Assembly (NCBI GenBank): GCA_002269645.1
Contig: NIVC01000928.1
Location: 62,001 to 126,000, forward strand
DNA: 64,000 nt
Direction of reading: 5' to 3'
DNA from: Macrostomum lignano
Taxonomy: Eukaryota
Shown: piece by piece, positions 1 through 40,695 of the stretch
Layout: every line of letters begins with the position of its first letter
How positions within the stretch are numbered: the first letter of the stretch is position 1
Program-made: the position numbers and the translations under genes
The notes under the pieces: model-generated
What the model was told of the DNA's origin: nothing
The model's input: only the letters and a program-made list of their open reading frames with translations
The model's database searches: none

Positions 1-365
1 TTGGGTAATCTCTGAGTCTCATTGGAGTCAAATTGGGTAATCTCTGAGTCGCATGGGAGTCAAGGCGGGTAGCCTCAGAGTCGCATGAGAGTCAAGGTGG
101 GTAGGGTAGCCTCAGTCTCATGAGAGTCAAGGCGGGTAACCTCTGAGTCTAATGAGAGTCAAAGTGGGTAACATCTGAGTCTCATGAGAGTCAAATCGGG
201 TAACATCTGAGTCTCATGAGAGTCAAGGCGGTTAACCTCAAGAGTCTCTGAGAGTCAAAGCGGGTAACCTCTGAGTCTCATGAGAGTCAAAGCGGGTAAC
301 CTCTGAGTCTCATGAGAGTCAAAGCGGGTAACCTCTGAGTCTCATGAGAGTCAAGGCGGGTAACT
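1..365. repeat. 32-bp minisatellite (CTGAGTCTCATGAGAGTCAAAGCGGGTAACCT) in the ADAR intron downstream of the deaminase exon; truncated by the window edge
   Basis: About 11 tandem copies are visible directly; each unit contains the palindrome TCTCATGAGA. Confidence 0.95.
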
Positions 366-418
366 CCTCAGTATGGAAGCGGCAACCCCCCATTTTCTAA
401 GAAACTGCTCTCGCTCAC

Positions 419-3400
419 CAAAACTTGGAACCGTTGGTCGCCAGTTGAAAAATGGATTCGGAGTTGCTCTTGATGGCGGTGGCCAGCTGGTGATGAAAAA
501 ATCGCAGCAGGCATCTCCGGCTGAGAATCTCGGCGTGACAGTCGAGGAGGCAGGAACCGCTGGCGTCCAGGTGCTGGCCGGAGAGGCACTTGGTCCCGGT
601 GGTCACGCACACGACGGTCAGGTCTGCGCTGGGGTCCAGGTCGGGTCCGCGGCTCATGACGATGCCGGCCAGGACTTTGCGGCGGGCCAGGCGCTCCGGC
701 AGGCCGGAGGCGAGCTGCTCAAACTGGTCTCGAACCAGGCGCTGCACCGAGTCGGCGAACGACTGCTCGGTCGGGGTGGCGGCCGGCGCTTGGCAGGGCG
801 AGGCCGAGTCGCCGCTGCCTGTGAATATTGGCGACGGCGAGAATGAGGATTGAGGCGATTGACTGACCGAGTTGTACGAGGGGGAGTGCGGGTTTTAAAG
901 GCAGAGGGCGGATTTTGGTGAGGGCGGATTTTGATGGTGAGGGCGGATTTTGATGAAAAGGGCGGATTTTGATGGAGAGGGCGGATTTTGATGGAGTGGG
1001 TGGATTTTGATGGAGAGGCGGATTTTGATGGAGTGGGTGAATTTTGATGGAGAGGGCGGATTTTGATGGTGAGGGCGGATTTTGATGGAGAGGGCGGATT
1101 TTGATGAAGAGGGCGGATTTTGATGGAGAGGGCGGATTTTGATGGTGAGGGCGGATTTTGATGGAGAGGGCGGATTTTGATGGAGAGGGCGGATTTTGAT
1201 GGAGAGGGCGGATTTTGATGGAGAGGGCGGATTTTTAAGAATGGGGAGGCGGATTTTTAAGAATGGGGAGGCGGATTTTTAAGAATGGGGAGGCGGATTT
1301 TTAAGAATGGGGAGGCGGATTTTGATAAAGAGGGCGGATTTTGACGGTGAGGGCGGATTTTGATGGAGAGGCGGATTTTGATGGAGAGGGCGGATTTTGA
1401 TGGAGTGGGTGGATTTTGATGGAGAGGCGGATTTTGATGGAGAGGGCGGATTTTGATGGAGAGGGCGGATTTTGATGGTGAGGGCGGATTTTGATGGTGA
1501 GGGCGGATTTTGATGGTGAGGGCGGATTTTGATGGAGAGGCGGATTTTGATGGAGAGGGCGGATTTTGATGGAGAGGGCGGATTTTGATGGAGTGGGTGG
1601 ATTTTGATGGAGAGGCGGATTTTGATGGAGAGGGCGGATTTTGATGGTGAGGGCGGATTTTGATGGTGAGGGCGGATTTTGATGGTGAGGGCGGATTTTG
1701 ATGGGGAGGGCGGATTTTAATGGTGAGAGGGGGACTGTAAGAAAAACGCCACCCTTTGCCCCAGTGAGCAGTTATCTTTCGACCAGCGTCTATCACTTGG
1801 CCAGCCATTCTGATATTGAAAGATGCTTCAAAAAAAACTATGAAAACCGGGCGGAAGCTTCAATCCATCCAATCTTCGCCCTCCGCTCTTCCCAATCCCT
1901 CCTCACCCAGCCCAACTCTGCATCGCGTGGCGCAAGTTGCGTCACTCAAAAGTCAACACTAAGCTAGAATTTACTGAGCACTCTCAAAGATGGCGACTTT
2001 TTAATGTTATTGAGTATACATATTTATCATCAACTTGATGATATCAACATGATATTTATCATTTCGTTCAACTATTGATTCGAGAACTAGAATGCATAAT
2101 GGACTTACTAGGAGAATTCATCGAAGACATGACACAAGCCTTGTCGAAAATAAATTTAACAGCAATATTTTTACCACCAGCATTTTGTTATTATTCTTTC
2201 ATTCGTTGTAATAATTAATTCAATAAAATACGAGTGTAATATCATAAAATATGAAATTCATCACCCTTGCTGTGCGCCTATAATAATAATCAGCAATCTT
2301 TAATGTACATTCCTACTTGCTTTCCAGAAGGACGCGTTCTTCTCTTAAAAAGCCCTCGTCTATGCAAATTTATTTGCTATGTAACAAAATGGCAACACGC
2401 TTTACAGAGTAGCTCATTTCTATCTGCGCTCGCTTGATATCTAACTGAATCAGTTCATTTAAATAAATTGATTAAATTTCTGCCCAGCAATACAGAGAGT
2501 CTAACCTTCAGCAGTTCTCCCAAATAAATTTCATATCTTTAGATTTACACTTGAAATTTCACGGAAAATCAGTCACACTGTTCTCGTTTCGAGGGACCTT
2601 TGAGGTTAAAAAAGGGCATAGTGATAGCTATTTTTCAGCATCTCGACATTGAATTATACACTGATGTCGCTTATTAAAACAGCCTACAATGTACACACAT
2701 AGCAATACGATTCCGACAGTACCGCGTCATGTTTGTTTTAAATTTCAGCTTAATTAGCCAATCCTTAACTCTCGCGGCTTTTTTAAATCCAAAGTGCCTC
2801 TGCCTTTAAGTCTATAGTGACTCCAACGCCAAAACTTGACGTAGCTCAGAGTTAGGGTTAAGCCATGGCTCTAAGGCTTTGATGCCAAAGCTTAAAGAAG
2901 TGCTGATATCTTGAGCTACATGGCTGGCTTTTAGGGCGGATGCATTTTTGCTTTCAACCTAGCTTTCCTCGAGAAACGAACAATAGTGACTGTGCAAGGT
3001 GAAAAGCTACAATGTAGTTTCTTTTAAAATAATATTTTCTTTGTTACCTTCTCAACGGGGGCGCAGGAGGCTAGTCTATTGTATAACCAGTTACCTATTC
3101 TATATATATTTTCTCTAGATTTCTATGACTAGAAATTAATGCCTGGAAAATGGGAGTGGTCCCCTACTCAGCCACCTATTTTTTGCGTTGCCTGTTAATT
3201 TTCGAGCTCTGCAGATGGTTCATGCCTTGTTAACGAGTAGTCCTAAAGATCAGAGTGCTAATTATGCCATTGAAGAGGAGTGTCTCCTTTAGTTGCTTTT
3301 CTGAACCACTTCTTTGCAGCAATCTTGACGAAACTGGAAAACGACGTCACTGTACAGCAATTGACATTCAATGAGACGCGACAATTAGTACCTTTGTATG

Positions 3401-6400
3401 TTTTAAGGCAACGCTAGAACAGTGTCGGACGCTTAAATTTAGACCGATCCTGACGCTTAAAAGCCCTCCTGCTAATACGCTTATATTATCAACGTCTGAT
3501 TGGAGCTTTTTGCAACTTGTAAATTGTTAGCACTGACAAGTTGCTTATAAATCACCCAACTACGAGTAATAAATGGATATAAAATGTATTGCATGCCTCT
3601 AAATGACGGCGACAAGAAGTAAAAACCGGAAACATTACGTTAGTTATAATAAGGCCTACATGGATTGCGTGTCCATTTTAAGTACACATAGTTCGATACA
3701 TTCATTCTACTCAATCAAGCTAATTAAGGGAGTCCGACAGTGGGAACAAAATTAATTCTGGATACTCGGATGGCCTTTACAATATATAGCCTCATATTTA
3801 CTACTTGTTTTGCACGAATTTCGCTTGCACTGATGGCTGACGGACTTACTAAGTATTTGACCGTTAACTGAGCTGGCCTTTTGGGCTGTTTGTTACAGAC
3901 CCCATGAAGAAGTGCTCATATTGTTTTCCATGCTGTTATTCATGATTAACTTTAAAAATTTGAATCTGGGGATTTTAGCCTTATGTTAGAGAAGGCGATG
4001 AACTAAGCTTTGCGAGCTACAAACACAAACTCACTGATGAAAGACAAAGCTTATGCATTTTATGCACTCATTAAAACACTCATTTTGGCGTCGCAGGCGC
4101 TATACCTTTAGCGTCCTGAAGCAAAACTGTTTGATTTCCACAACGAGGGTGGGGGACAAAGCATTTTGGCATGTCCCCCATCTATTTTGCCCCCCTCCCA
4201 GTGGAAGCCTTTGAGTTGACAGTGCGCAGTAGATTCTAGCTCAGTATTGACTTCTGAGTGACGCAACTTGCGCCACGCGATGCAGAGTTGGACTGGGTGT
4301 GGAGGGATTGGGAAAAGCGGAGGGCGAATATTGGATGGACTGAAGCTTCCACCCGGTTTTCATTGTTTTTTTAAGCATCTTTTAATATAAAAATGGTTTC
4401 CCAGGTGATAGACGCTGGTCGAAAGATAACTGCCCACTGGGGCAAAGGGTGGCGAGTTTTCAATGTTGATGAGTATACAAGTTTGGCTTAGAAGCCTCTG
4501 AATAAACTAAGCTCAACAATTTGTATTGGCAAAAGAGATGCTGTAGGACAAAAATCAAGCTTGGAACTTTTCTCCAGCTAAGTCGTTAAGTCACCCCAAC
4601 GGAAGTTTCATCACGTTCGCTTGAATTTTGCATCTATCTACGCTCAAAAGCGGTATCGTTCTGAAGGCTTGCTTTTTTGCAAAAGAAGATTCCCAGCCCC
4701 TTGTGGAAATTGGATGCCTTGTAGGAAACAGAAGAAGCTTTTTTGATAAGCCAAGGGCTTGCAAGCATACTATAGCAAAACTGAAGCAGCCCAGGGAGAA
4801 AGTATACTAGGCCTATCCGATACATATAGCCACTATAGCCTATAGTTCAGCTGGCACAAATTAAGGAAGCTTAATCTCAGCATAACCAACCTGTTCAAGA
4901 CTGCGCAACGCTACAATTAAAGACTGTATGATTAGTGCTAATATTCGATATTCCGACTCAGTAAAACTGTTAATTAAAGAGTTCTACGTGTCAATAAGTG
5001 TCATACAAGGACGAATTCATGTAATACTGTTGCGATGCTTTGATACCCTTCTTGAACCTTATTAATAGAGACATTAAAGTCCCTCTGATCTATATCCAAT
5101 ATACTAAAAATGAGTTGTCTGTATGTGGGTAGGTATGCGATAGATTTCAGAAAAAATGGCTCAACCGATTTTCTTCAAACTTGCACCATTTGATCAGAAA
5201 TTTTCCTGGGACGGTACATGCATCTTGGCTAAAAAATTGCTCAATTTTAAAGGGATTAAATATTCGAAAAACCTGCTTTTTTGCAAAGGTCAAGCAGCTC
5301 TTTCAACCTAAAATTCATTGTAAAAATGCTAGAGAAAAAACTGACTGGCTGAATTCCGATTGTGATAAAGATTGCATCACAACAAGTTGAAAACAGTGCC
5401 GAAGAAATGCACACACGACTTGATTTAAATTGCGTAACCAATATTGCTAACTTAAATTGAGACTGATACTGGCTGACTGAGAAATTGATTATGTCATTAC
5501 TTTTTACTTCAATTGACTTGCTGTAAGAATTGAATTATAAGGGCCACAATTCACGTTCTCCAATTGAAAAGAGATAGCCAAGATGCGAACAGACTGGAAT
5601 GCTAATGTAGCGACCTGGGTTCGAATCTTAGTAGTGCAAAAAGATTTTTTTATCAAAACACCTTAAAAACACAACAAAACTGCTAAACATAATAGAAGCG
5701 CAATGTCAAACATAGAAGAGCCACCATGTCGAACATTTAAGAGCCACCATCTCAAACATATATATGACTTTATGTCAAACTTTAAAGAGCCACCATTTCG
5801 AACATTAAATAGCCTCTTTGTCAAACACTAGAGAGCCGCCGTGTCAAACATAAAAGAGCCACCAGGTTAAACATTAAAGAGCCACCAGGTTAAACATTAA
5901 AGAGCCACCAGGTTAAACATTAAAGAGCCACCATGTCAAACAATAAAGAGCCACCATGTCGAACATTTAAGAGCCACCATCTCAAACATATATATGACTT
6001 TATGTCAAACTTTAAAGAGCCACCATTTCGAACATTAAATAGCCACTTTGTCAAACACTAGAGAGCCGCCGTGTCAAACATAAAAGAGCCACCAGGTTAA
6101 ACATTAAAGAGCCACCATGTCAAACAATAAAGAGCCACCATGTCGAACATAAAAGAGCTACCATGTCAAACATTTAAGAGCTACCATGTCAAACATTTAA
6201 GAGCTACTATGTCAAAACATAAAAGTGCAATCATGTCAAACCTAAAAGAGCCACCATGTCAAACATAAAAGAGCCACCATTTCGAACATTAAAGAGCCAC
6301 CATTTCAAACAGTAAAGAGCCACCATGTATAACATTTAAGAGTCACCATATCAAACATCAAATAGCCACTTTGTCGAACATTAAAGAGCCACCGTGTCAA

Positions 6401-9400
6401 ACATAAAAGAGCCACCATGTTAAACATAGAAGAGCCACCATGTCAAACATAAAAGAGCCACCATGTCAGACATTAAAAAGCCACCGTATCAAACATAAAA
6501 GAGTTACCATGTAGAACATTAAAGAGCCACTATTTCACACAGTAAAGAGCCACCATGTCAAACATAAAAGAGCCACCATGTCAAACATTAAAAAGCCACC
6601 ATGGCGAACATTAAAGAGCTGCCATGTCAAACATTAAAGAGCAATCATGTCAAACACAAAATAGCCACCATGTCAAACATTGAAGAGACACTATGTCAAA
6701 CGTATACGTGACTCCATGTCAAACATAAAAGTGCCACCATGTCAAACATAAAAGTGCCACTATGTCAAAAATTAAAGAGCCACCATGTCGAACATTAAAG
6801 GGCCACCATGTCAAATATAAAAGAGCCACCATGTCGAACATAAAAGAGCCACCATGTCGAACATAAAAGAGCCACCATGTCGAACATAAAAGAGCCACCA
6901 TGCCAAATATAAAAGAGCCACCATGTCGAACATTTAAGAGCCACCATGCCAAACATAAAAGAGCAACGATGTCAAACATAAAAGAGCCACCATGCCAAAC
7001 ATAAAAGAGCAACGATGTCAAACATAAAAGAGCCACCATGTCAAACATAAAAGTGCCATTATGTCAAAAATATACGGGACTCCATGTCAAACATTAAAGA
7101 GCCACCATGTCAAACATTAAAGAGCTATCATGTCAAACACAGAATAGCCACCATGTAAAACATAGAAGAGACACTATGTCAAACGTATACGTGACTCCAT
7201 GTCAAACATAACAGAGCCTCCATGTCGAACATTAAAGAGCCACCATGTCAAACATTAAAGAGCCACCATGTCAAACATTAAAGAGCCACCATGGCGAACA
7301 TTAAAGAGCCACCATGTCAAACATAAAAGTGCCACCATGTCCAACATTAAAGAGCCACCATGTCCAACATTAAAGAGCCACCATGTAAAATATAAAAGAG
7401 CCACCTTGTCAAACATTAAAGAGCCATCATGTCAAACATAAAAGAGCCATCATATTCATGTGAAACATATACGTGACTCAATGTCAAACATTAAAGAGCC
7501 ACCATGTCCAACATTAAAGAGCCACCATGTAAAATATAAAAGAGCCACCTTGTCAAACATTAAAGAGCCATCATGTCAAACATAAAAGAGCCATCATGTG
7601 AAACATATACGTGACTCAATGTCAAACATTAAAGAGCCACCATGTCAAACATTAAAGAGCTATCATGTCAAACACAAAGGAGCTACCATGTCAAACATAG
7701 AAGAGCCACCATGTCAAACATTAAAGAGCTATCATGTCAAACACAAAAGAGCTACCATGTCAAACATAGAAGAGCTACCATGTCAAACATTAAAGAGCCA
7801 CCTTTTTAAACAAAAAAGAGACTTCATTTCAAACATAAAAGAAGTGTCATGCCAAACAAAATGGAACCACTATAAAGCTAAGGAAATTGTTGCACTAGCC
7901 ACTTGTTCTCTGGTGGATGCTTGCTTTTTAAGGATGGATTCTTGCTTACAGGGGGATGCTTGCTCTTGTGGGTGGAGGGTACTTGCTATCTGAGAGGGGG
8001 TTGCTAGATATCTATAAGGTATCTTTGTATCCAGGTTATGCTTGCTATCAGGGGTTGCTTGCTGTCTGGGGTTGCTTGCTATCGGGGGGATGCTTGCTAC
8101 CTGGGGGATGCTTGCTACCTGGGGGATACTTGCTATTTGGGGATCGATGCTTGAATGCTGTCTGAGGATGCTTGCTGTCTTGGGATGTTTTGTTTTTAGA
8201 GGGAATGTCTGTTGTTGTTTTTTGAAGGTTTTATTTCGCTGTCTATTTGTTATTTGTAAAGAACAAGGATTCTATCCAGATGTCCCCCATCGGGGGGCGA
8301 AGATTGCTAGTCTAATATACTAAAAATGAAATTTTCAATGAAAAATGATTTTCTCCCGAACGGCTCAACCGATTTTCTCCGTTTCTTCGCCAAAACATGT
8401 CAAATGTGCCCGGGACGGTACATGTAATTTTATTAGGCTCTAGCTCAATGCTAAGGGGATTAAATATTCGAAAAACTGTTTTAAATGGGCTTTTTCAATG
8501 CAAAATTCTATCAGCGAGAAACTTCACTGCCAATTTTAATGATTGCGCCAGAGCCAACTGATAAGAAAACTCACTCCGCCCCACTGCCCAGATAATTACT
8601 CTATTTAACTTGCGTAACCAATTAAGGGGGGGGTATAATAAAAATTCTGGATGCTGGCAGACAGCCTACCCCTGCTAGTCCTATATACTAAAAATGAGTT
8701 GTCTGTGGGTATGCGATAGATTTCAGAAAAATTGGCTCAACCGATTTTCTTCAAACTTGCACCATTCGATCAGAAATTTTCCTGGGACGGTACATGCATC
8801 TTGGCTAAGAAATTGCTCAATGTTAAAGGGATTAAATATTCGAAAAACATGCTTTTTTGCAAAGGTCAAGCAGCTCTTTCGACCTGAAATGCATTGTAAG
8901 AATGCTAGAGAAAAAACTGACTGACTGAATTCCGATTGTGATAAAGATTGCATCACAACAAGTTGAAAACAGTACCGAAGAAATGCACACACAACTTGAT
9001 TTAAATTGCGTAACCATATTGCTAACTTAAATTGAGACTGATACTGGCTGACTGAGAAATTGATTATGTCATAACTTTTTACTCCAATTGACTTGCTGAA
9101 AGAATTGAATTATAAGGGCCACAATTCATGTTCTCCAATTGAAAAGAGATAGCCCTGATGCGAACAGACTGGAATGCTAATGTAGCGACCTGGGTTCGAA
9201 GCTTAGTAGTGCAAAAAGATTTTTTTTATTAAAACACCTTAAAAACACAACAAAACTGCTAAACATCAAAGAAGCGCAATGTCAAACATAGAAGAGCCAA
9301 CATATCGAACATAAAAGAGTTACCATGTCAAACATAAAAGAGCTACCATGTCATGTCGAACATTAAAGAGCCACCATGTCGAACATTAAAGAGCCACCAT

Positions 9401-12400
9401 GCCAAACATAAAAGAGCCACCATGTCAAACATAAAGAGCCACCATGTCAAACATTTAGGAGCCACCATGTTAAACATATATGTGACTTTATGTCAAATAT
9501 TAAAGAGCCACCATGTGAAACATTAAAGAGCCACCATGTCAAACATTTAAGAGCCACCATGTCAAACCTAAAAGAGCCACCATGTCTAACAGTAAAGAGC
9601 CAGCATGTCGAACATTAAAGGGCCACCATGTAGAACATTAAAGAGCCACCATGTCAAACAATTAAAAGCCAGCATGTCAAACATAAAAGAACCACTTTGT
9701 TGAACACTAAAGAGCCACCATGTCAAACATAAAAGAGACAACATGTCAGACATTAAAAAGCCACTGTATCAAACATAAAAGAGTTACCATGTAGAACATT
9801 AAAGAGCCACCATGTCGAAAATTAAAGAGCCACTATGTAGAATATTAAAGAGCCACCATGAAGAACATTAAAGAGCCACCATGTCAAACATTTAGAAGCC
9901 ACCATGTCAAAGATTTAAGAGCCACCATGTCAAACATTTAAGAGCCACCATGTCAAACATAAAAGAGCCACCATGTTAAACATTAAAAAGCCACCATGTC
10001 AAACATAGAAGAGCCACCATGTCAGATATTAAAAAGAGCCACCATGTCGAACATAAAAGAGCCACCATGTCGAACATTAAAGAGCCACCATGTCAAACAT
10101 ATATGTGACTTTATGTCAAACATTAAAGAGCCACCATTTCAAACATTAAAGAGCCACCATGTCGAACATTAAAGAGCCACCATGTCAAACATTAAAGAGC
10201 CACCATGTAAAACATTAAAGAGCCACCATGTCTAACAGTAAAGAGCCACCATGTCGTACATTAAGGAGCCACCATATTGAACATTAAAGAGCCAGCATGT
10301 CGAACATAAAGAGCCACCAAGTCAAACATAGGAGACACAATTTCAAACGTAAAAAGAAGCGTCATGCCAATCACAAAGGAGCCATTATAAAGCTAAGGAA
10401 ATTGTTGCACTTGCTACTTATTGTCCGGTGGATGCTTGCTATTTAGTATAGGATCAATACTTGCTATCAATTGGTTGCTTGCTATCTGGGGTGCTTGCTA
10501 TCTGGGGGTGCTTGCTATCTGGGGGTGCTTGCTATCTGGGGGTGCTTGCTATCTGGGGGTGCTTGCTATCTGGTGGTGCTTGCTATCTGGAGGTGCTTGC
10601 TATCTTAGAATGTTTTCTTTTTGCATTGCACTTCATCTGAGCAGTTTTTCTATTGACTATGTGAAGGCTTTGTTTGGCCATCTTATTGATACTTGTAGAG
10701 AACAGAGATTCTATCTAGATGTCCCCCATCGGGGGGCGAAGATTGCTAGTCCTATATACTAAAAATGGTCTGTCTGTGTCTATCTATCTATCTATCTATG
10801 TGATCGATTAGAGAAAAAATGGCTGGACCGATTTTGTTCGAACTTGCACTGTTCGATTAGAAATTTTCCCGTGACTGTACATGCATCGTGGCTAAGAAAT
10901 TGCTCGATGCTAAAGGCATTAAATATTCGAAAAACATGCTTTTTTGCAAAGGTCAAGCAAACTTTTTGACTTGAAATGCATTGTAAGAATGCTAGAGAAA
11001 AAACTGACTGGTTGAATTCTAATTCTGAAATAGATTGCATCATAACTGAATTGTAACTCCGACTTGAATTGAAAATGCAGTGTGGAAGCGTAGCACCAGA
11101 CTTGATTTAAATTGCGTAACCATATTGTTAACTGATACTGACTGACTGAGAAACTGATTATGTCATAACTGCTTCGTGTGATTTACTCTATGCTTGGATT
11201 TTAAAGTGTTGAATTATATAAGTGCAAAATTTCATGTTATCAAAACGATGAGAGCTAGCTTAGAGGTAAACAGACTGAACTGCTAAATTCAGAAACGATG
11301 GTTCGAACTTTCATCTCTTATATCTAAAGCTGAGTGGATCGATCGACCGGCCGGGTTTAACGCGTATCTCCTCCTAGACGACTGCCAACTCAAATGCGAG
11401 ACTTATATATATCAATGCAGAATTTTCCTACGCAACAAATAGGCTATTTTAATGTTTAAATTTAAAAGTTGGGTCTGTTAAAAAAGCAGAAAACTGTTTT
11501 CTTAACCTTCTTTGGCCACTTTGCCTCTCCAGTGGAGGGGTAGTGGCATAGTTGTAAAAACAACCACCCCAACCTCCCCCGCAGGTCGCTGTGTATTGGA
11601 GGGGTGGGTGACGCGTGTTCTGGGTTCAATGCTAATAAAAACCCCGCGTGTTGGGGGTGCAGTAAAATTTAATGATTCCCCCGGAATAGGGGGGGGTTGG
11701 TTTGGGCTGAGTGTACATAGCAAAGTACATTGTAAGCAGATAGATAGGACTGTGTCGAGATTCAATTGGTTTTATTATCGGCGTCTTTCAAAAGGCAGTC
11801 CTGTGTATTAGCTGGGCAGTGAAATTCAATGAATAAACTTGCGAGCCTCTTACTGTAGCAGGCAGTGAATGTACACTCGATACTTCAATGCTTTAAATCA
11901 GGAAGTTCAAAGGCTAACTGTTCCTTGAGTTTTAAGCTTTGAGAGGAGAGAATTATATTGCTGGAAAGATCTTGCAACGCTGAGTTTGGGGATATAAGTT
12001 ATTTGCTTTAAATATGAAAACAAAAAGCACAGCATTGAAAAAACGATTTCCGAGTAGATAGATAAGCGAGTAGAGATAAGAGATGAGAGAGAAGAAGAGA
12101 GAATTGAGAGAAGACAGGAGAGAAGAGATAAGAGAGAGAAGCGAGAAGAGAAGGGAGAGATGAGAAAACATGCTATGATATTTCAGAGGTTTTATGGAGG
12201 ATTTGGAAGATTTGGAAGATTTTTTGACGTATACCCAGACAAGTAAAAAGCATATTTTTATAAACTTCAGTTTCATAGTCTTGATTGACTGAAATTTGAT
12301 AGAGATGATATTTTTTTAAATTGATGGATTGTAGCTTGAAGGAGATGATATACGATGGATTGCAGTTTAACGAAGAGGATTTTGTATCTGTTTCATGGAG

Positions 12401-15400
12401 AGGATGAAATGGCTAAATGAAATGGAATAGAGAAAAGAGAAAAGGAAAGAGAAGATAAAATATTAGATGAAAGAGAAAATGAACAGAGAGAATTAAAAGG
12501 GACAGATTAGAGAAAAGAAAAAGAGAATAAAGGCGAGAGAAGAGATGAGGGAATTGAGAGGAGAGAGGAGAGGGGGGTAAGAGAGGAGAAAGAGGAGACA
12601 GGAGGGAGTAGAGCCGAAAGACGAGAGAGAAGAGATAAATGAGTAGAGATGAGGGGAGAGAGAGGAGAGAGAAGCGAGATTATAAGGGAGAGAGGAGAGG
12701 GGAGAAAGTAGAGAGATGAGTGAGCAGACAGGAGATAAAGGAGAGGAGAGAGAAGAGAGAAGAGATAAAAGAGGAGAGAGAAGAGAGAAGAGAGAAAAGA
12801 GGAGAGAGAGAAGAGAGGAGAGATAAGAGAGCGAGAGAGAGAGATGAGAGAGAGATGAGAGATGAGAGAGAGATGAGAAATGAGAGAGATGAGAGCAAAG
12901 AGGGAGAGAAGACAGGCGAGAGTCAGTCTGGATGATGGCAGGCAGTCAGTTTTTGCAAACAGGTAAAACAACATGGTTTTTGGGAGCTTAATAGAGGATT
13001 TGGAGAGGATTTGGACGATGGGATTCGTGTCATTGGATTCAGCTGATGGATTTCAGAAAATGAAATTCTGGCGTTGGGAGTTCTTCCCCTTACTCCGCCA
13101 ACGGAGGAGTTGGCCTCGTAGAGTATAATTTTTTTTAATTAAAGCTTTTTAACGTCAGGAAAACTAAAAGACTTTTTAAAAAGAATCGTCATGTAAAAAT
13201 CGTAGAAGCGTTATATAAAAATCATAGAAGCGTCATGTAAAAAATCATAGAAGCGTCATGTAAAAAATCATAGAAGCGTCATGTAAACAATCATAGAAGC
13301 GTCATGTAATGAATCATAGAAGCGTCATGTAAACAATCATAGAAGTGTCATTTAAAAAATCATAGAAGCGTCATGTAAACAATCATAGAAGTGTCATGTA
13401 AAGAATCGTAGAAGCGTCATGTAAGCAATCATAGAAGCGTCATTTAAAAAATCATAGAAGCATCATGTAAACAATCATAGAAGCGACATGTAAAAAATCG
13501 TAGAAGCGTCATGTAAACAATCATAGAAGCGTCATTTAAAAAATCATAGAAGCATCATGTAAACAATCATAGAAGCGACATGTAAAAAATCGTAGAAGCG
13601 TTATATAAAAATCATAGAAGCGTCATGTAAAAAATCATAGAAGCGTCATGTAAAAAATCATAGAAGCGTCATGTAAACAATCATAGAAGCGTCATGTAAT
13701 GAATCATAGAAGCGTCATGTAAAAAATCATAGAAGCGTCATGTAAACAATCATAGAAGCGTCATGTAAACAATCATAGAAGCGTCATGTAAAAAATCGTA
13801 GCAGCGTCATGAAAAAATCATAGAAGCGTCATGTAAACAATCATAGAAGCGCCAAGTAAAAATCATAGAAGCGCCATGTAAAAAATCATAGAAGCGTCAT
13901 GTAAACAATCATAGAAGCGCCATGTAAACAATCATAGAAGCGTCATGTAAAAATCATAGAAGCATCTTGTAAAAAATCATAGAAGCGTCATGTACAAAAA
14001 TCATAGAAGCGTCATGTACAAAAATCATAAAAGCGTCATGTACAAAAATCATAAAAGCGTCATGTAAACAATCATAGAAGCGTCATGTAAACAATCATAG
14101 AAGCGCCATGAAAAAATCATAGAAGCGTCATGTAAACAATCATAGAAGCGCCATGTAAAAATCATAGAAGCCTCATTTAAAAAGTAATGAAAGTGTCATT
14201 TAAAATATTAAGAAGCATCGTGGTAGAATAAAAGAAGCGTCATGTCAGACATGAAGGGTGTCATGTAAAAATTAAATGAAGCTATAATGCTGTGCTGGGG
14301 AGAATTACTGAGACGTCAAGGCTCTCAGAGAATAACTGAGATTACGAGGGGGGGGGGTTTCTGAGATGTCAAAGCAAAAGTCAGAGGCTACTTCAAAGTT
14401 TATGTACTTTACTCAATTTTTTATTGCATTCTTTGTTGGCTCGCCACGGGGGGGCGCTGATAAAAAAAGCGTAATGTAAAAAATAAAAGAAGCTTCATGT
14501 CGAACTTAAGAGATTCATTTGGGAATCCCTACGATGTCGAGGCTTGCAGGGAATCGCTATAATGCTGTAGTAGTGCTATAATGACTCTCAGAGAGAATTA
14601 CTGAAATTTCAATGCTTTAGGGTTAGGTTAGGGTTAGGGTTAGGGTAGGGTTAGGGTTAGGCTAGGGTTAGGGTTAGAAGGTTGACAGATATTTTTAGAT
14701 TTCCAAGGCTTATTGGGGGCATTGCTGAGATGTCAAGGGGGGAAGTTGATGTGTTAAAGCTTGTGGGGGGGAATTATTGACATGTCAAGGCTTACAAGGT
14801 TTGACAGGAGATTTTTTAAGATTTCAAGGATATATGTAGCTTATTAAAAAACGTGTATTGCATTTCTTTGGCGCCCCAACGGGGGGCGTAGATTGCTAGT
14901 TAATTCTAAAACTAAAAGCCAAGCTGCACTAAAATAAAGACAGTAACACAACTTAAAACTCAAAAAACATTGATAAAACAAATATATTTCGATGCTCGAA
15001 CCGGAAAACGAAAAACGAAAACAATGCAAACAAATTCACAAGCAATCAGTTGCTCAATGACGCTTGGTAACCTTTGTTTCGTACATGTACTCGTGTGGAC
15101 GCAAGACTCAAAAGTTTAAGGCTGTCCAATTCTGAGAACATGTGCGGAACAAAAGCTTCCACACTTAATTATTAAGCAATTCTCATCAGCTACAACAGAA
15201 AATCGCAAATGAATTTCAGTGTTGTAAATGATGAGAGTTAAAAAATGCGTCACATTTTCAACATACTACTGACAGTCAGTAGCAAAAAAGTAGTACGATA
15301 ATATCGGAGAGGCTAATTTTTCTAAAATCTAGAAGCTAGCAAAATAAGGAAAAAATCAGGTCTACCCACCGCTGTAGGTGCTCATCAGGTGAAATGCTTC

Positions 15401-16145
15401 GCGTAGAGCCACTTGAGCCGATCTCATTTTTGCCACCTTTTTGTTATTCGCTTCAGCCTGAAATGAACAATTTGAATTAGATTCTAAAAAAATAGACAAA
15501 GTTGAGAAATACATATTCCAGCATAGGCGTAACCACCGTATAAGCGTAGCCATCGACAACGCATTGCATAACGAATCTCGGCGTCCTGCCTGGCGCTTCC
15601 TTAGTATCCACAAGATGAAAAGTGACCCCGTTCGGCCGGAGCTCGTTAATAATTGACACAGGATTTTTGGTGGCAAGCTCGGATGCGCTGGGCAGACCTT
15701 TCTGCTGCTGCTGGGAGGCTGGCGGAGTGGGAAGAGCGGCCAAGAACGAAAGCTGAGGTCGAGTAGCAGGAGCAGAAGGAGCATGAGGAGCAGGAAGAGG
15801 AGGCGGAGTCCAATGGTCTGAACGCGGCTTCTTGGCTGGAGATGAGCCAGACGTGAACGCATCCGCAGCTGACCTCTTGGAGCCGGCGGCAACCCGTGCG
15901 GCAGGGGGGGCTGCAGGAGCGGAGTTCAAGAGAGCAGCCACAGCCAGCCTCGCAGCCTCCTGCTTGGCCTCCTGTTTCGAATGACCATTGGCTCGAAACT
16001 CGCGGCCGTCAACTCGGCAGGCCATTTCAAACACGGGACAATGCGGGGGGCCGGACTGGCTAATCAAGACGTAGGCTACCTGGCCCTGGCGCAGCTCGTT
16101 CAGTTGCGTCACGGGCGTCTTCACGGTGAAGCCGCTGTCTGACAT
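419..16145 (-). CDS. ADAR2: ADAR2-type double-stranded RNA adenosine deaminase (partial; 3' end lies beyond the left edge). Exons 16145-15537, 15457-15370, 818-419
   Basis: dsRBD1 KTPVTQLNEL...GHSKQEAKQEAARLA. dsRBD2 KNPVSIINEL...VDGYAYT|AEANNKKVAKMRSAQVAL is split by a 79-bp GT-AG intron. The phase-1 donor at 15369 (G|GTGGGT) matches the phase-1 acceptor at 819 (CACAG|GC). The deaminase exon reads ADSVQRLV...RKVLAGIVM...TTGTKC...DCHAEILSRRCLLRF with the zinc-binding/catalytic CHAE motif intact. Donor GTGAGC at 418. No Z-alpha domain seen. Confidence 0.93.
903..1730. repeat. 19-bp minisatellite (GAGGGCGGATTTTGATGGA), ~43 copies, ending ~85 bp before the acceptor of the ADAR deaminase exon (in transcript direction)
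   Basis: Direct tandem periodicity of 19 bp. Confidence 0.95.
1741..4461. repeat. Long inverted repeat pair: arms 1741-1989 and 4209-4461, ~2.2-kb spacer
   Basis: The reverse complement of the left arm aligns to the right arm at roughly 88-90% by manual alignment, with perfect runs of 37 and 29 bp. No TSD found. Confidence 0.9.
5700..7810. repeat. 23-bp minisatellite (AAACATAAAAGAGCCACCATGTC), ~90 copies, internal to Helitron-like unit 1
   Basis: Direct tandem periodicity. Confidence 0.95.
9280..10330. repeat. Same 23-bp minisatellite, ~45 copies, internal to Helitron-like unit 3
   Basis: Direct tandem periodicity with the same flanks as unit 1. In both units an 18-bp G-rich repeat follows (TGCTTGCTA(C/T)CTGGGGG; ~7930-8170 and ~10430-10600). 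Confidence 0.95.
12030..12930. repeat. Degenerate GA-rich (polypurine) microsatellite tracts
   Basis: (GA/GAGAA/GAGAT)n runs at ~12030-12170 and ~12430-12930. Confidence 0.85.
13190..14200. repeat. 22-23-bp minisatellite (AAA(A/C)AATCATAGAAGCGTCATGT), ~44 copies
   Basis: Direct tandem periodicity. Confidence 0.95.
14617..14677 (+). repeat. Interstitial telomere-like (TTAGGG)n, ~10 imperfect units
   Basis: TTAGGGTTAGGTTAGGGTTAGGGTTAGGGTAGGGTTAGGG... read directly. Confidence 0.85.
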
Positions 16146-17453
16146 TGCGGTTTCTGAGCTGCAACATAGAATGAAGCAGAGCACTTCTCAAATTACTTAG
16201 GTTACTGTTAAGCCTACATGTGCCTATAGTAGAGATGCCTAAATCCCTAAGAGATCCCTAAACAGAGCACGGGAGGGGGGAAGGCGGGGAAGAAGTTCCA
16301 TTTCCAATGCCCGTTGAACAGTCGGAGTCTATTGCTGCAGTGAAGTCGAGCCCATCTGGAAGGAGCTGACAATAGAACCAGCTGCAACAGACTCCGCCAT
16401 TCAATGCGACAGAAAGTAAGTAAAATAAAATTTACTGCGGCAAACCTGACGTGTAGAAGAGACGAAACTCAATGGAAATAAAATCACCACCCTCAAGTCG
16501 ATTAGTTGAGTCTTATTTATACCTGAGGCGGCAGAGACAAAATTGGGGGGGGGACCGCCCGTCCAACCGGAGGGCGCAGCAATCAATAACGCCCCAGCAA
16601 AAACTGCAGCAGATTGTAGCGAAGCAGTTTCAAACGAGTTTTGGACCAGCTAAGCTTTCTTCCCTGACGAAAGCTATTGGGCTCGGGACCCACCTCCAAA
16701 ATGAGTCTCTTAGTTGATACTTGGACTGCTCAAAGGGGGGGGGAACAGAAAAACATTTTTTGCAAAAAAGAAAACGTGACTGGAGATTGAGCGAGCGATC
16801 GAAATTCTACTAAAAGGAATTTTTGGAATAATTGAAACAATAAATTTCAAAGCAGAAATTATGAAAAGATTAAAGCGATCGCTGTGTTTTGCAGTTGTTT
16901 GTTGAGAGTTTTAAGCAGGTATGAACCAAATTTCGGACACAGACTTCAATGGGAGCTAAGCTGAAACAAGACTCCAAAAGAATTCTCAGCGGCCCCGAAA
17001 CTTCCCCGCTGCATTCTTTGATAAGAGAAACTGGAGAATGCCAGACAAGAAAAACTTATCCCAGTATTGAACAGCATGTCGCTGGAATGCCTATTTTGCT
17101 ATGATCAAAGCAGTGATTAAAGAATAAAGCCAGGTAAAACAAATTGAACAAGCTGAGTGATATAACTCACTGACTCAACTACCATGCTTGCAAAAAAGCA
17201 TTCGACAGATGATCACTATCATCGCCTGTTGTGCTATGCGAAATTTATTGTTTTAAAGAAAAATTTCGCGCTAAATTTGATAATAAATTGATAGATGCGA
17301 CAATATTATTTGGTTAAAACACAATTTTTGCTTACATAAATTAAACAAGAGACTTAAAACATAACTTAGAAAACATAGTAGCATAATGTGTAATGAGCTA
17401 AATAAAATAGGAAACTTAACAACAGAGGTTTGCATGCAAGCTGACAGACAGAC

Positions 17454-17928: not shown

Positions 17929-30511
<12,583 letters not shown>

Positions 30512-36900: not shown

Positions 36901-39900
36901 TTTTTTCTTGGTATTAAGATCGGGATTTGGAAATTAGGATCAGGTCTTTTAGTGTATTCTAGCTTATAAATCTATATAAAGTTAAACAAAATTGATTTAA
37001 AATGTCAAGATCAAAAAGTAGAATACAACAAAACTGATGCAAAGTTTTGTAACCAACAAATTAATAATGTAATAAGTATAAGGTAAAACAAAATATATTC
37101 AAGTAATCACTAATTCTATAAATTTTAATCAAAAGACCTGTTCCTAATTCTTGTGTTTTTAGGGTCAGGATTCTAGTCCCGCGGGAATCCAATTTTCCTT
37201 GGGATCCCAAGATTTTGGGATTGGGATTGGGATCCTGTCTGACCTCTATTACAGTGCCCATTTCTCTATAATCCTATAGTTTCCTGTAACCATCACTATA
37301 ATATAACAAAAATTGAAAATAGTAAGGAAAACAATATAAAAAACACAGATTTGTAACATGTACCACCACACTCTGGATCATATAGTGTATGCTCAAAAAT
37401 TTGGGTATGCATTGGCCTTGCATGCCAAAATTAGGCATGCACAGTTGGCATGCATCACGCTTAAAAAATAGTATATATATATATATATACCTGGTATGAA
37501 GTATAAATTTCAAGCTTTCCAGTTTTTTAAGCTTGTAAAAAGCATTTAAACAAAATCTTGCATGTATTAATTTTCTGCTATAAATAGTTTTGCTAAAAAA
37601 GCATAAAAATCAACCAAATTTTTTGCTAATAAATAAGGGTCTTTTATGCAATTTAAAAAAAGTCATTTATTGTTGCAACATTGGCATATTTTTGAAAATA
37701 GGTATGCATTACATTTTTTATGGTGTGCATTTGTAATTATTCAATTTTTGTTCAGGAATGCACCCAGCATGATCTAGACTATAGTGTACTGCAAATATAA
37801 AAAACTACCTTCCTCTAGATTGTTGAGATATCCTTGAAAACTGGCAATTTTATATCTATTTAATTTTCAATATGCAATATAAACACATGTCATATTATGC
37901 TTGTGTCTAAAAAAAGATGATACAAAAATAAAAACTCCAACTATAAATCAAATCAAATCAAACAGATAAAATAGCCAATGCTCAATTCAATAAATAATGT
38001 CACATTCATCATCTATTCATGTATTGCATTCAATTGTTCATTGAAAGCTTAAAGTTGAAAAATGAAAACAAAAAATGTAACAAAAATTACTTTGAAATAG
38101 GAGCATAAGACCCTCTAAGAGCACTAGAGCAATGACTCTCTTATCCTAGTAATGCTTAGGACTGGAGAGAGAACACATGCAGTATATATACCAGTAGACC
38201 ATATACTGCTCAGGCCAGGATAATAGAAGAACACACTGTATGGTTTAAATATACTGTATGTGCTAAGCAAAAATCCAAATCTAATATTATTGTAAATATA
38301 ACCCAGTTTCAATTAGATATACTTCTAAAAATATATAAACAAAGTTGTAACACAAATGACTAGAAAAGAAAAACATAAGATCAAAATAAATATAGCTTTA
38401 TATATGCATATCTAAGCTTATATATTCATTCTAAAAGTAATACCAAATAAAATTCAATTATTGCAATAACAATAGCAACAATGTTATACTTGCCCTTTCT
38501 ATAAAAATTAGGGATTGGCTCAATGCTTTTTATTTACAAGTTAGAAAAAATAGCAGGGCTTAAAATTAATATTTTTAGTTGATAAAATGACTTTTACTGT
38601 AGTGTGCACCTTAGGCGAAGGGCTATTCAGAAGTTAAAATAGATGGTGGTTTGCAGTGCATTCACAATGAAGCATTGTCAGTCAGCTTCCATTGATAAAT
38701 CATGAGTTGATATAAGTTCTGACAATCATAGGCAATGCTAGACAGTGGCTGTACACTTTGTCACAACACCCAACCTGCTCCTAGGAGGTTGACAATGATG
38801 ACAACGATGGCGGCCAGGTTTTGGTGCCTCCCAGTGGCAATGGCAGCAAAGCCAACAGTGTCACTGGTGGCAGCGGTGGCGGTAGCAGCGGCACCATCAA
38901 GCTGTCCGGCATTAAAAGTGAATCTGGCGACTCTAGCCAGGTGGCAGCATCCACCAATGGCCAGCAGCAGCAGCAGTCATCGTCCTACAGTCGCAAGGTG
39001 GCCATGTACGTTGGCAATCTGACCTGGTGGACAACAGACGAAGACATCCTGGCCAGCATGCAGGAATTGGGCGTCAGCGATATTGTTGAGATCAAGTTTC
39101 ACGAGAACAGGCAGAATGGCCAGTCCAAGGGCTTCTGCGTGCTGGTTGTGGGCTCCGAGCAGTCCAGTCGCACTGTGATGGACCGCCTGCCCAAGATGGA
39201 GCTGCACGGTCAGCAGCCCATGGTTACTCACTGCAATAAGCAGACTCTGCAGTATTTTGAGCAGCAAGCCGGCGGCGGCAGAGGCGACAGGGACGGTGGC
39301 GGCCAGAGTGGCTCGGGTGGCCGGTCTGGCGGCGGTCGCGAAGACCGGGATGGCGTCGGCCAGCAGGGCATGCAGCAGCGGGACGGCTACCGTGGCGGCG
39401 GCGGCGGCGGTGGCATGCGGCAGTCGGGCGGCCAGCAGGGCGGCTCGCAGTTCAATAACCGGCCTCAGCCATTGATGGCTTCGTCTGCGCAGCCGCAGAA
39501 TCAGCAGCTGGCCCAGCAGATGGCTCAGCAGATGCAGCAGCAGCAACAGCAGGCTCAGATGCTGGCCTATCAGCAGCAGCGCATGGCCATGGCCGCCCAG
39601 CAGCAGCCGCCTCAGTTCATGCGGCCTGGCATGCCGCCGCCTCAGGCTGGGCAGTTCATGCGACCCCCAGCCGGTATGATGCTGCCGCCTGGCGGGCCGC
39701 ACATGCCGCCGCAGCAGGGCATGCCGCCGGGCTCTCAGGCTGGCGGGCCGCCGCCTCAGGGCATGGTTATGCCGGGCGGCCGGCCACCAGGTATGCCCGG
39801 TATGCCGCCAGGTATGCCACCGCAGCAGGGCGGGCCGCAGCCGCATGGTGGCATGCCGCCGCCTGGACCGGCCACCACGGCTGCTCCTCACATCAACCCG

Positions 39901-40695
39901 GCTTTCTTTCCCAGGCCGCCGATGCCGCCTGGAGGGGGACCGCCTGGCGGCCCTGGCATGCCGCCACAGCAGCAACCTGGCGGCCCTGGTCAGCAGCCAC
40001 CGGGCATGATGCCTGGCGGCCCTCCCCAGCTGGACATGTTTGGCAGGCCAATCGCTCCTGGATCCTTCATGCCGCATCAGCAGCAGCATCCGCCATCGTC
40101 TATGGCCGGCCCGGGCGGACCTGGCGGAGTTCCCGTGTCCAGCTCTGGCGTCGGTATGCCTCCAGCCAGCGTCGCTGCAGCTGCCGGCCTGTCCGAGTCC
40201 GATGCCGAGGAGATGCTGGCCAGGAACAAGACGGTGTGCAGCTCGGCCATCAGCCGGGCGGTGCAGGATGCCGCGGCCGGTGACTACGCTGCCGCCATTG
40301 AGACCCTGGTGACGGCCATCTCGCTGATCAAGCAGAGCAAACTGGCCGGAGACGATCGGTGCGCCATTCTGATCAACTCGCTGCAGGACACCCTGCACGG
40401 CATCGAGAGCAAGAGCTACGGCACCAGCCAGAAGGCAGGCGGTCGCAGCGGCGGCGGCGGTGGAGGCGGCGGCAGATCCAGCAGTCGGCGCCGCCGGTCG
40501 TACAGCCGGTCTGGCAGCGAAGAGCTGGATGACCGGGTGGTGAGCGCCAGCAAGCGGTCGCGCAGTCGCAGCCGAGACGGCGGCGGCAGCAGCAGCAAGC
40601 GTCGGCGAAGTCGCGACCGCGGCGACCGCTACGACTACGAGAGCGGCGGCGGCGGCGGTAGTCGGCGTCACGGCGACCGCTCCTACAGGCACTGA
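30945..40695 (+). CDS. CPSF6: Cleavage and polyadenylation specificity factor 6 (CFIm68)-like. Exons 30945-31007 and 38785-40695
   Basis: Exon 1 MNDTDQLDLYNIGEEEEFKSE|GTAAGC resembles the CPSF6 N-terminus (IDIY...GEEF.QE); phase-0 acceptor CTCCTAG|GAG. RRM KVAMYVGNLTWWTTDEDI...KFHENRQNGQSKGF...LPKMELHGQ, a Pro/Gly/Gln-rich region, the conserved NKTVCSSAISRAVQDA...IETLVTAISLIKQSK...LINSLQDTLHGIESKSYG block, and an RS tail. Confidence 0.95.
32124..36120 (-). pseudogene. Multi-exon DDE transposase pseudogene with C-terminal RG repeat and Spin/Ssty (Tudor)-like domain
   Basis: Motifs (N)ATSKKGRHF, IKFMMTDCH, LYCGMH (CxxH), ESGTQRLICTACKAL, FRGNR, GCRALGLID, DHLPGG and KDNVPGERVFG. GT-AG introns. 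In-frame stops at ~34713, ~33794 and ~32820, several frameshifts and a MITE insertion. Confidence 0.85.
34899..35197. mobile_element. 299-bp MITE with perfect 14-bp TIR CATACATGCGCAAC and 8-bp TSD TCTGTGCT, inserted in the transposase ORF
   Basis: TSD at 34891-34898 and 35198-35205. Removing it restores the frame HDTICWS-TEPHFTVLK. Confidence 0.9.
36848..37250. repeat. Dispersed MITE-like repeat rich in GGGATT; a second partial copy lies at ~63385-63550
   Basis: Imperfect terminal inverted repeat TAGAGGT(T/C)A(A/G)AC(G/A)GGAT; the first ~170 bp match 63385-63550. No TSD found. Confidence 0.55.

What the first reader, a model, noticed from the sequence alone, without database searches (positions are those of the whole stretch)
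1741..4461. ~250-bp fold-back inside the ADAR gene's own intron: candidate self-editing feedback substrate
Seen: two ~250-bp arms at ~89% identity in inverted orientation, the nearer arm ending ~920 nt upstream (transcript direction) of the deaminase-exon acceptor. It is the only long inverted pair I found in the 14.5-kb intron; the Helitron copies are all direct. Of 13 transition differences I count, 9 give G-U pairs and 4 give A-C mismatches (a preferred ADAR context) in the transcribed orientation. That bias is not significant on its own. Known: mammalian ADAR2 edits its own intron to alter splicing, and Drosophila Adar edits its own mRNA. Inference: an independent, repeat-derived autoregulatory duplex could modulate splicing of the catalytic exon. 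It may equally be a neutral TE fold-back.
Basis: partly seen in the sequence, partly recalled or inferred. Interest (0 to 1): 0.72.

Follow-up and report, generated by a model that had tools for sequence, protein, structure and literature searches.

The report
Inverted repeat pair in flatworm ADAR intron
Two roughly 250-base copies of a non-coding, transposon-like repeat lie in opposite orientation inside a long intron of a flatworm RNA-editing (ADAR) gene; they could pair into double-stranded RNA, but nothing in the sequence suggests more than an ordinary repeat fold-back.

Summary
Arms 1741-1987 and 4216-4461 are 223/248 identical in inverted orientation, with 13 transitions (9 G-U and 4 A-C in the transcribed strand, p=0.27). 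The nearer arm ends 923 nt upstream of the acceptor of deaminase exon 818-419. It is the only long inverted pair in the 14.55-kb intron. The gene is an ADAR2-type editase of Macrostomum lignano or a very close relative. In the pre-mRNA the arms are predicted to form a 231-bp duplex (-428 kcal/mol, z=-47) closing a 2.2-kb loop.

The arms look like two truncated copies of a ~300-bp non-coding element with ~37-nt terminal inverted repeats:
- a third copy of the terminus lies at 1985-2020;
- arm GC is 48-49% against 38% in the surrounding intron;
- there are no ORFs and no RNA-family match.

The duplex contains no splice signal, and no exon or splice site has a complementary partner. The arms (90%) are only slightly less diverged than other repeats in the same intron (85-86%). 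Unrelated fold-backs occur elsewhere in the window.

The most likely reading is a neutral repeat fold-back that would be a generic ADAR substrate. Self-regulation is unsupported. Genome-wide copy number, conservation and actual editing could not be tested here.

The parts
1741..1987 (-). Arm 1 of the inverted pair. It is the 3' arm in the pre-mRNA and ends 923 nt upstream of the acceptor at 818. I read it as a minus-oriented copy of the repeat unit that has lost the outer 18 nt of one terminus.
   Evidence: 223/248 identity to arm 2; GC 0.49 against 0.38 in the intron.
4216..4461 (-). Arm 2 of the inverted pair. It is the 5' arm in the pre-mRNA, 10.9 kb downstream of the donor at 15369. I read it as a plus-oriented copy of the repeat unit that has lost its other (inner) terminus.
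   Evidence: (GC 0.48).
1985..2020 (+). A 36-nt segment in direct orientation with 4443-4479 and inverted relative to 1741-1758. I infer it to be the intact terminal inverted repeat of the arm-1 copy (consensus TGTATACTCAWYAACATTRAAAASTCGCCAYC(C)TTTG in unit orientation).
   Evidence: 31/37, E=5e-6; 30-nt pattern: 2 matches, 0 expected in shuffles.
4443..4479 (+). The terminal 37 nt of the arm-2 copy. It runs 18 nt beyond the end of the inverted homology, so 4461 is not a true element boundary.
1988..4215 (.). The 2.2-kb stretch between the arms, which forms the loop of the fold-back. It is AT-rich intron sequence with no coding capacity and is not repeated elsewhere in the window.
   Evidence: no ORF above 56 aa; no Rfam match above noise; no tRNA; no other copy; GC 0.38.
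884..1727 (.). A 19-nt satellite array (44 copies, with a 22-nt variant at 1218-1323). It fills nearly all of the space between arm 1 and the acceptor.
   Evidence: sequence.
419..818 (-). The first deaminase-domain exon of the ADAR2-type gene (400 nt, carries the DCHAE zinc/catalytic motif).
   Evidence: frame, acceptor ttcacag|GC, donor TG|GTGAGC; A_deamin, E=9e-18.
15370..15457 (-). An 88-nt exon encoding the second half of dsRBD2. Its donor at 15369 opens the 14,551-nt intron that holds the fold-back.
   Evidence: sequence, splice sites; phase match to exon 818.
15537..16145 (-). The exon carrying the start codon, dsRBD1 and the first half of dsRBD2.

Best explanation
The pair consists of two copies, in opposite orientation, of a ~300-bp non-coding repeat. 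The repeat is most likely a MITE-like element with ~37-nt terminal inverted repeats, and each copy has lost one end. The copies sit 2.2 kb apart in the 14.55-kb intron between the dsRBD exons and the first deaminase exon of an ADAR2-type gene of Macrostomum lignano or a very close relative. When the intron is transcribed from the minus strand, the copies can pair into a ~248-nt imperfect duplex (231 bp, helices up to 67 bp) that closes a 2.2-kb loop. A duplex like this is a generic, promiscuous ADAR substrate of the same kind as inverted repeat pairs in the introns of other animals. It would probably be hyper-edited wherever ADAR is active and then removed and degraded with the intron, with no dedicated effect on ADAR expression. 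Shown: the pair, its geometry, its predicted stability, the absence of coding or known-RNA content, the absence of splice signals or exon complementarity, and the gene identity. Inferred: TE origin, editing, and neutrality.
For: Pair and statistics. Predicted fold: 231 inter-arm pairs in the 2.8-kb MFE; duplex -427.8 kcal/mol against -150.4 +/- 5.8 when shuffled. TE-like anatomy: a third copy of the terminal 37 nt lies at 1985-2020. It is direct with 4443-4479 and inverted to 1741-1758, so the unit carries terminal inverted repeats and the homology break at 4461 is not an element end. Arm GC is 0.48-0.49, against 0.38 for the loop and flank. There is no ORF above 56 aa, no Rfam match and no tRNA. 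Nothing marks the locus as special. Arm identity is 90% (K2P 0.096), against 85-86% for other repeat copies in the same intron. Unrelated fold-backs with ~250-nt and ~150-nt arms lie at 29058-30051 and 24275-25269 in the same 64 kb. The G-U/A-C bias has p=0.27. No feedback architecture: nothing is complementary to the acceptor, donor or exons, and the duplex is 923 nt from the acceptor, behind a satellite. Background: nearby inverted repeat copies are the conventional source of long dsRNA for hyper-editing across metazoans (PMC9989829).
Against: Only two copies of the repeat exist in 64 kb, even with an nhmmer profile, and both are in this one intron. A multi-copy TE family is therefore not demonstrated. 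Neither copy keeps both ends, so no target-site duplication could be read. No genome of this species or a close relative was reachable, so copy number and conservation are untested. Two copies only 2.2 kb apart are unlikely by independent insertion unless the family is very abundant, which points to a local event (local hopping, aberrant transposition or inverted duplication). Neutrality is a default assumption, not a result: no RNA data were available.
Confidence: 0.8

Rival explanations
1. The fold-back is a self-editing sensor: ADAR protein edits the duplex in its own pre-mRNA, and editing changes splicing of the catalytic exon (for example AA to AI acceptors, cryptic exons or retention), giving negative feedback.
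For: The duplex is on the transcribed strand, is very stable, and is the only long inverted pair in the intron that precedes the catalytic exon. Four AA dinucleotides preceded by pyrimidine-rich tracts exist in the arms, at 4308, 4288, 1827 and 1816. Precedent: mammalian ADAR2 creates a 3' splice site in its own intron by editing (PMC4761006). The two UniRef M. lignano models of this gene show aberrant exon joining around this intron, although those models are riddled with frameshifts.
Against: No splice signal, branch region or exon lies in or pairs with the duplex. The duplex is 923 nt from the acceptor, against 47 nt in ADAR2. Candidate AA acceptors are expected by chance. The only donor-like GTGAG in the arms (1906) lies upstream of the 3'-arm AA sites, so no exon can be defined within an arm. 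The arms are as diverged as neutral repeats nearby, and the G-U bias has p=0.27. The anatomy is TE-like. There are no conservation or expression data.
Confidence: 0.04
2. On origin: the pair is a local inverted duplication, or the product of an aberrant or local transposition event, rather than two independent insertions of a dispersed family. The function is the same neutral fold-back.
For: There are exactly two copies in 64 kb, 2.2 kb apart. Each copy is truncated at a different end, as expected from aberrant transposition or repair.
Against: A simple inverted duplication of 4216-4461 does not explain the extra direct copy of the terminus at 1985-2020, which spans the 4461 homology boundary. 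The foreign GC content of the arms suggests that the source was an inserted element.
Confidence: 0.3
3. On origin: the whole 1741-4461 (or -4479) block is one non-autonomous fold-back or long-TIR DNA transposon with ~248-bp terminal inverted repeats.
For: The arms would be the termini of a 2.7-kb unit. Another element with ~250-nt inverted arms exists at 29058-30051, so the genome harbours such elements.
Against: No target-site duplication flanks the unit: the flanks read ...GGGACTGTAA| and |AATGTTGATG. Homology to the inner repeat at 1985-2020 continues 18 nt past the supposed right end. The interior is not repeated and has the GC content of ordinary intron. The left end abuts a satellite.
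Confidence: 0.08
4. The intronic hairpin is processed by Dicer into endogenous siRNAs (an hpRNA-like locus) rather than, or as well as, being edited.
For: There is a long, nearly perfect duplex with helices up to 67 bp.
Against: There are no small-RNA data, no identified target, and no match to the arms elsewhere in the window. It has the same neutral-repeat features as above.
Confidence: 0.05

Closest known systems
Intronic inverted repeat pairs that form long dsRNA and are hyper-edited by ADARs (e.g. inverted Alu pairs in primates; nearby inverted repeat copies in other metazoans, PMC9989829)
   Same: Two copies of one repeat lie in opposite orientation within a few kb in a single transcript. 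The predicted duplex is about 250 bp and about 90% paired, is non-coding, and lies in an intron.
   Different: Editing has not been observed here. The multi-copy nature of the repeat is not shown (two copies in 64 kb). The host is a flatworm, for which I found no editing literature. The host gene happens to be an ADAR.
Mammalian ADAR2 (ADARB1) auto-editing feedback (Rueter et al. 1999, as summarised in PMC4761006)
   Same: There is an intronic dsRNA inside an ADAR2-type gene, upstream of an exon whose correct splicing is needed for active enzyme.
   Different: In ADAR2 the edited AA is itself the new 3' splice site, 47 nt from the normal acceptor, and lies inside the duplex. Here the duplex is 923 nt or more away, contains no splice signal, nothing pairs with the acceptor, and the arms are repeat copies.
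Drosophila Adar self-editing of its own coding exon (from my own knowledge: Palladino et al. 2000)
   Same: An ADAR transcript would serve as substrate of its own product.
   Different: The Drosophila site is exonic and recoding. Here both arms are intronic and no exon has a complementary partner.
MITEs (miniature inverted-repeat transposable elements)
   Same: The unit is about 300 bp, non-coding, with inferred ~37-nt terminal inverted repeats, a composition distinct from its surroundings, and an intronic location.
   Different: The TIRs are reconstructed from two truncated copies. No TSD is readable, no autonomous partner is present in the window, and copy number is unknown.

Membership tests
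ADAR2-type auto-editing splice feedback | The duplex contains the intronic AA that becomes a new 3' splice site close to (47 nt from) the regulated exon | tested here: not met
   The nearest arm ends 923 nt from acceptor 818, with satellite 884-1727 in between. No inverted match to 760-900 or to the whole exon plus or minus flanks at E<=1-5.
ADAR2-type auto-editing splice feedback | Editing of the site is observed and depends on ADAR, and it yields a frame-shifted mRNA | not testable with these tools
ADAR2-type auto-editing splice feedback | The duplex is conserved at the orthologous locus in related species | not testable with these tools
   The only close relatives found were two frameshifted UniRef M. 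lignano models with no DNA on record.
Exonic self-recoding (Drosophila Adar type) | A coding-exon adenosine is paired with an intronic complementary sequence | tested here: not met
   Both arms are intronic. Exons 380-900 and 15330-16200 have no inverted match in 1-16300 apart from a 16-nt match at E=0.26.
Intronic inverted-repeat pair / promiscuous ADAR substrate | Two copies of one repeat lie in opposite orientation within a few kb in the same transcript | tested here: met
   1741-1987 and 4216-4461, 90% identical, 2228 nt apart, both inside the intron 15369-819.
Intronic inverted-repeat pair / promiscuous ADAR substrate | A long stable intramolecular duplex is predicted on the transcribed strand | tested here: met
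   231 inter-arm pairs in the MFE of 2.8 kb; -427.8 kcal/mol; z=-47.5.
Intronic inverted-repeat pair / promiscuous ADAR substrate | Clustered A-to-G RNA-DNA differences in the arms | not testable with these tools
   No transcriptome reads are available.
MITE / non-autonomous TIR element | Terminal inverted repeats | tested here: inconclusive
   A 37-nt terminus is present at 4443-4479 and again at 1985-2020, inverted to 1741-1758. The full TIR pair is only reconstructed across two truncated copies.
MITE / non-autonomous TIR element | Target-site duplication | tested here: inconclusive
   Each copy keeps only one intact end (2020|TATTT and 4479|AGTTT), so TSDs cannot be paired.
MITE / non-autonomous TIR element | Small and non-coding | tested here: met
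   The unit is about 300 bp. The only long ORF in the arm region (88 aa, from 1701, running from the flanking satellite through arm 1) is broken in arm 2, and its arm-derived 75 aa have no homologue.
MITE / non-autonomous TIR element | Many dispersed copies in the genome | not testable with these tools
   Two copies in the 64-kb window by blastn and nhmmer. Exact-word scans of metagenome and prokaryote collections found 0. No flatworm genome is reachable.
Single fold-back / long-TIR transposon spanning 1741-4461 | A target-site duplication flanks the two outer ends | tested here: not met
   The flanks are GGGACTGTAA| and |AATGTTGATG, and homology to 1985-2020 runs past the right end.
ADAR family (host gene) | dsRBDs plus an A_deamin domain with the HAE motif | tested here: met
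   Pfam dsrm x2 (E=1.9e-21) and A_deamin (E=8.9e-18; only the first 65 profile positions lie in the window). DCHAEILSRRC is present. The best named hits are ADARB1/Adar.

The most novel reading that the evidence does not exclude
A flatworm ADAR2-type gene has independently acquired a transposon-derived hairpin in the intron upstream of its catalytic exon. The hairpin would act as a sensor of nuclear ADAR activity: editing, or ADAR binding to the duplex, would alter splicing or processing of that intron and so feed back on enzyme level. This would be a convergent, repeat-born analogue of mammalian ADAR2 auto-editing.
Probability: 0.04. Interest if true: 0.65.

Novelty: new member of a known kind. 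Interest (0 to 1): 0.15.

Why it matters
As it stands it matters little. Inverted repeat pairs in introns are the commonest source of long dsRNA in animal transcripts, and one of them lying in an ADAR gene is expected by chance in a repeat-rich genome. It is a convenient, well-defined candidate locus for asking whether Macrostomum ADAR hyper-edits repeat hairpins at all; I found no literature on this. Only if editing-dependent splicing were shown would it become an example of convergent ADAR autoregulation.

Tried and rejected
1. Protein search with the 75 arm-derived residues (of 88) of the ORF that runs through arm 1, hoping to pick up spurious ORFs from other genomic copies. No candidate was found.

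2. Exact-word scans with the two best-conserved stretches of the arms. There were 0 hits in metagenome contigs and 0 in prokaryote genomes. This is uninformative for a flatworm.

3. The look-up of encoding contigs with the M. lignano homologue P0001 and with the dsRBD-exon ORF of the window. Neither is on record, so no homeologous or orthologous intron could be fetched.

4. An nhmmer profile of the two copies against the window. No further diverged copies turned up.

5. Rfam and tRNA scans of 1-17000. The only result was a sub-threshold SCARNA7 match (18 bits against a gathering score of 65), so there is no SINE head or known ncRNA.

6. The idea that the adjacent 19-nt satellite (884-1727) derives from the element's terminus. 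Local alignments were no better than shuffles: best 15/500, the other three orientations 112-337/500. Rejected.

7. The idea that the 5.7-7.8 kb satellite is the reverse complement of the 0.9-1.7 kb satellite, which would make a larger palindrome. The monomers are different. Rejected.

8. A search for an ADAR2-like complementary sequence pairing with the acceptor, donor or exons. None was found.

9. A scan of the arms for AA-to-AI acceptors. Four AA sites sit behind pyrimidine tracts, but no partner donor defines an exon. This is not evidence either way.

10. A literature search for ADAR or RNA editing in Macrostomum. One incidental paper was returned and nothing relevant.


Full report
**Observation**

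The repeat finder gives two abutting inverted segments. Gapped alignment merges them into one pair, 1741-1987 against 4461-4216, with 223/248 identities (90%), three gap columns and 2228 nt between the arms.

In RNA transcribed from the minus strand, 9 of the transitions become G-U wobbles and 4 become A-C mismatches. On the other strand the numbers swap.

It is the only inverted pair of any length in the first 16 kb.

**Host gene and organism**

On the minus strand there are three exons:
- An exon with a start codon, dsRBD1 and half of dsRBD2 (16145-15537).
- An 88-nt exon completing dsRBD2 (15457-15370).
- After a 14,551-nt intron (15369-819), a 400-nt exon (818-419) that opens the deaminase domain and carries DCHAEILSRRC.

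The splice phases agree. Pfam finds two dsrm domains and the start of A_deamin.

The best database hit is a Macrostomum lignano "A to I editase" entry. It is identical to the window's protein over long stretches, for example 47 consecutive residues around dsRBD2, and is otherwise broken by frameshifts. The next hits are ADARB1/Adar proteins at about 35% identity. The window is therefore from the flatworm M. lignano or a very close relative, and the gene is ADAR2-type.

The nearer arm ends 923 nt upstream of the acceptor. A 19-nt satellite (884-1727) occupies 844 of those 922 intervening bases.

**Structure**

The MFE fold of the 2.8-kb minus-strand RNA (4500 to 1701) pairs the two arms through 231 base pairs, with uninterrupted helices up to 67 bp. 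The two arms alone co-fold at -427.8 kcal/mol, against -150.4 +/- 5.8 when one arm is dinucleotide-shuffled (z = -47.5). The plus-strand version is 22 kcal/mol weaker, which simply reflects the 9:4 wobble split. The fold-back is thus thermodynamically credible in the pre-mRNA.

**What the arms are**

- The 2.2 kb between the arms has no ORF above 56 aa, no Rfam match above noise, no tRNA and no second copy in the window. The block is therefore not an autonomous transposon.
- The arms are 48-49% GC inside an intron of 38% GC.
- The last 19 nt of arm 2 plus the next 18 nt (4443-4479) recur in direct orientation at 1985-2020, on the inner side of arm 1 (31/37; 30-nt pattern: two matches, none in 100 shuffles). 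That segment is in turn inverted relative to the outer end of arm 1 (1741-1758).

The simplest reading is a unit of about 300 bp with terminal inverted repeats of about 37 nt. The minus-oriented copy (2020 to 1741) keeps one terminus and has lost the outer 18 nt of the other, next to the satellite. The plus-oriented copy (4216-4479) keeps the other terminus and has lost the first. This is MITE-like anatomy.

Because each copy keeps only one end, no target-site duplication can be read. The alternative of one long-TIR element spanning 1741-4461 is disfavoured for two reasons. There is no flanking duplication, and homology continues past the supposed right end.

The family has only these two copies in 64 kb, even with a profile search. 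A local event therefore remains a serious alternative to two independent insertions; candidates are local hopping, aberrant transposition or inverted duplication.

**Is the locus special?**

Several results say it is not.
- Other repeat copies in the same intron are 85-86% identical (5095-6750 against 8679-10330; 5134-5383 against 10797-11046). The arms' 90% (K2P 0.096) is in the same range and gives no sign of constraint.
- The same 64-kb window contains unrelated fold-backs: one with 253-nt arms at 29058-30051 and one with ~150-nt arms around 24275-25269. Inverted repeat structures are therefore common in this genome.
- Nothing in the gene is complementary to the acceptor, the donor or any exon. 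The only hit is a 16-nt match at E=0.26.
- The duplex holds no splice signal, and both arms are in the same intron, so pairing only loops out 2.7 kb.
- Four AA dinucleotides behind pyrimidine tracts occur in the arms. The only donor-like motif lies on the wrong side of the 3'-arm sites, so this is what chance would give.

**Comparison with known systems**

In mammalian ADAR2 auto-editing, the edited intronic AA is itself the new 3' splice site. It lies 47 nt from the normal acceptor and adds a frame-shifting 47 nt (PMC4761006). That architecture was tested here and is not present. Drosophila Adar self-editing is exonic (from my own knowledge), and here no exon is paired.

What the feature does match is the general class of nearby inverted repeat copies. 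These are the conventional source of long dsRNA for ADAR hyper-editing across metazoans (PMC9989829). Membership is met for geometry and predicted duplex. It is untested for actual editing and for genomic copy number.

**What could not be done**

- No genome or transcriptome of Macrostomum was reachable.
- A protein search with the arm ORF found nothing.
- Exact-word scans of the metagenome and prokaryote collections found nothing.
- The M. lignano homologue and the window's own exon ORF are not on record for locus retrieval.
- I found no paper on ADAR or editing in Macrostomum.

**Verdict**

The best explanation (about 0.8) is a neutral fold-back made of two copies of a small non-coding, transposon-like repeat. 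It would be a generic ADAR substrate if transcribed in ADAR-expressing nuclei. A dedicated self-regulatory role is possible but has no sequence support (about 0.04). The feature is a new instance of a well-known kind and is of low interest unless RNA data show editing-dependent splicing.

Noticed in passing
window 29058-30051 (related fragments at 24199-25427): An unrelated fold-back element with ~253-nt inverted arms (87-97% identical) and a 487-nt AT-rich loop. The arms are built from sub-terminal repeats of a CGACACTTTTT-type motif. Partial copies of the same family lie around 24.2-25.4 kb, including a second, weaker fold-back at 24275-25269.
   Followed up: partly
window 15370-15457 (minus strand): Both UniRef M. 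lignano models of this gene (P0001, P0036) join ...DGYAYT directly to the start of exon 818 and omit the 88-nt exon that completes dsRBD2. This shifts the frame (AAATRPRPAKRRPPP...). It could be a non-productive skipped isoform, or simply poor gene models from an indel-rich assembly, since the models switch frame repeatedly.
   Followed up: partly
window 14617-14677: A short interstitial telomere-like array (TTAGGGTTAGGCTAGGG, 3.6 copies) lies inside the ADAR intron.
   Followed up: no
window 5095-7842, 8679-10605, 10797-11046, 13182-14245: The intron is largely composed of composite direct repeats. A ~590-nt unique head is followed by a 23-nt satellite (93 and 46 copies) and then a 17-18-nt TGCTTGCTATCTGGGGG array. 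The copies are 85-86% identical. A different 23-nt satellite lies at 13182-14245.
   Followed up: partly
window 3-364 and 884-1727: A 32-nt satellite (11 copies) lies in the intron downstream of the deaminase exon, and a 19-nt satellite (44 copies) lies immediately upstream of it. The catalytic exon is therefore bracketed by tandem arrays. The long ORFs overlapping them (e.g. 1257-1808 minus) are probably artefacts of the repeats.
   Followed up: no
window 17929-23304 (minus) and 38821-40695 (plus): The neighbours of the ADAR gene are also RNA-processing genes: an hnRNP Q/Syncrip-like gene (acidic domain, RRMs, RGG tail) and a CPSF6-like gene (RRM plus RSLD domain). This is probably coincidence.
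   Followed up: no
window 60233-61171 (minus): An ORF with integrase zinc-binding and rve core domains, indicating a retrotransposon fragment. A P450 fragment lies at 56706-57527 and a kinase-like ORF at 51468-52268.
   Followed up: no
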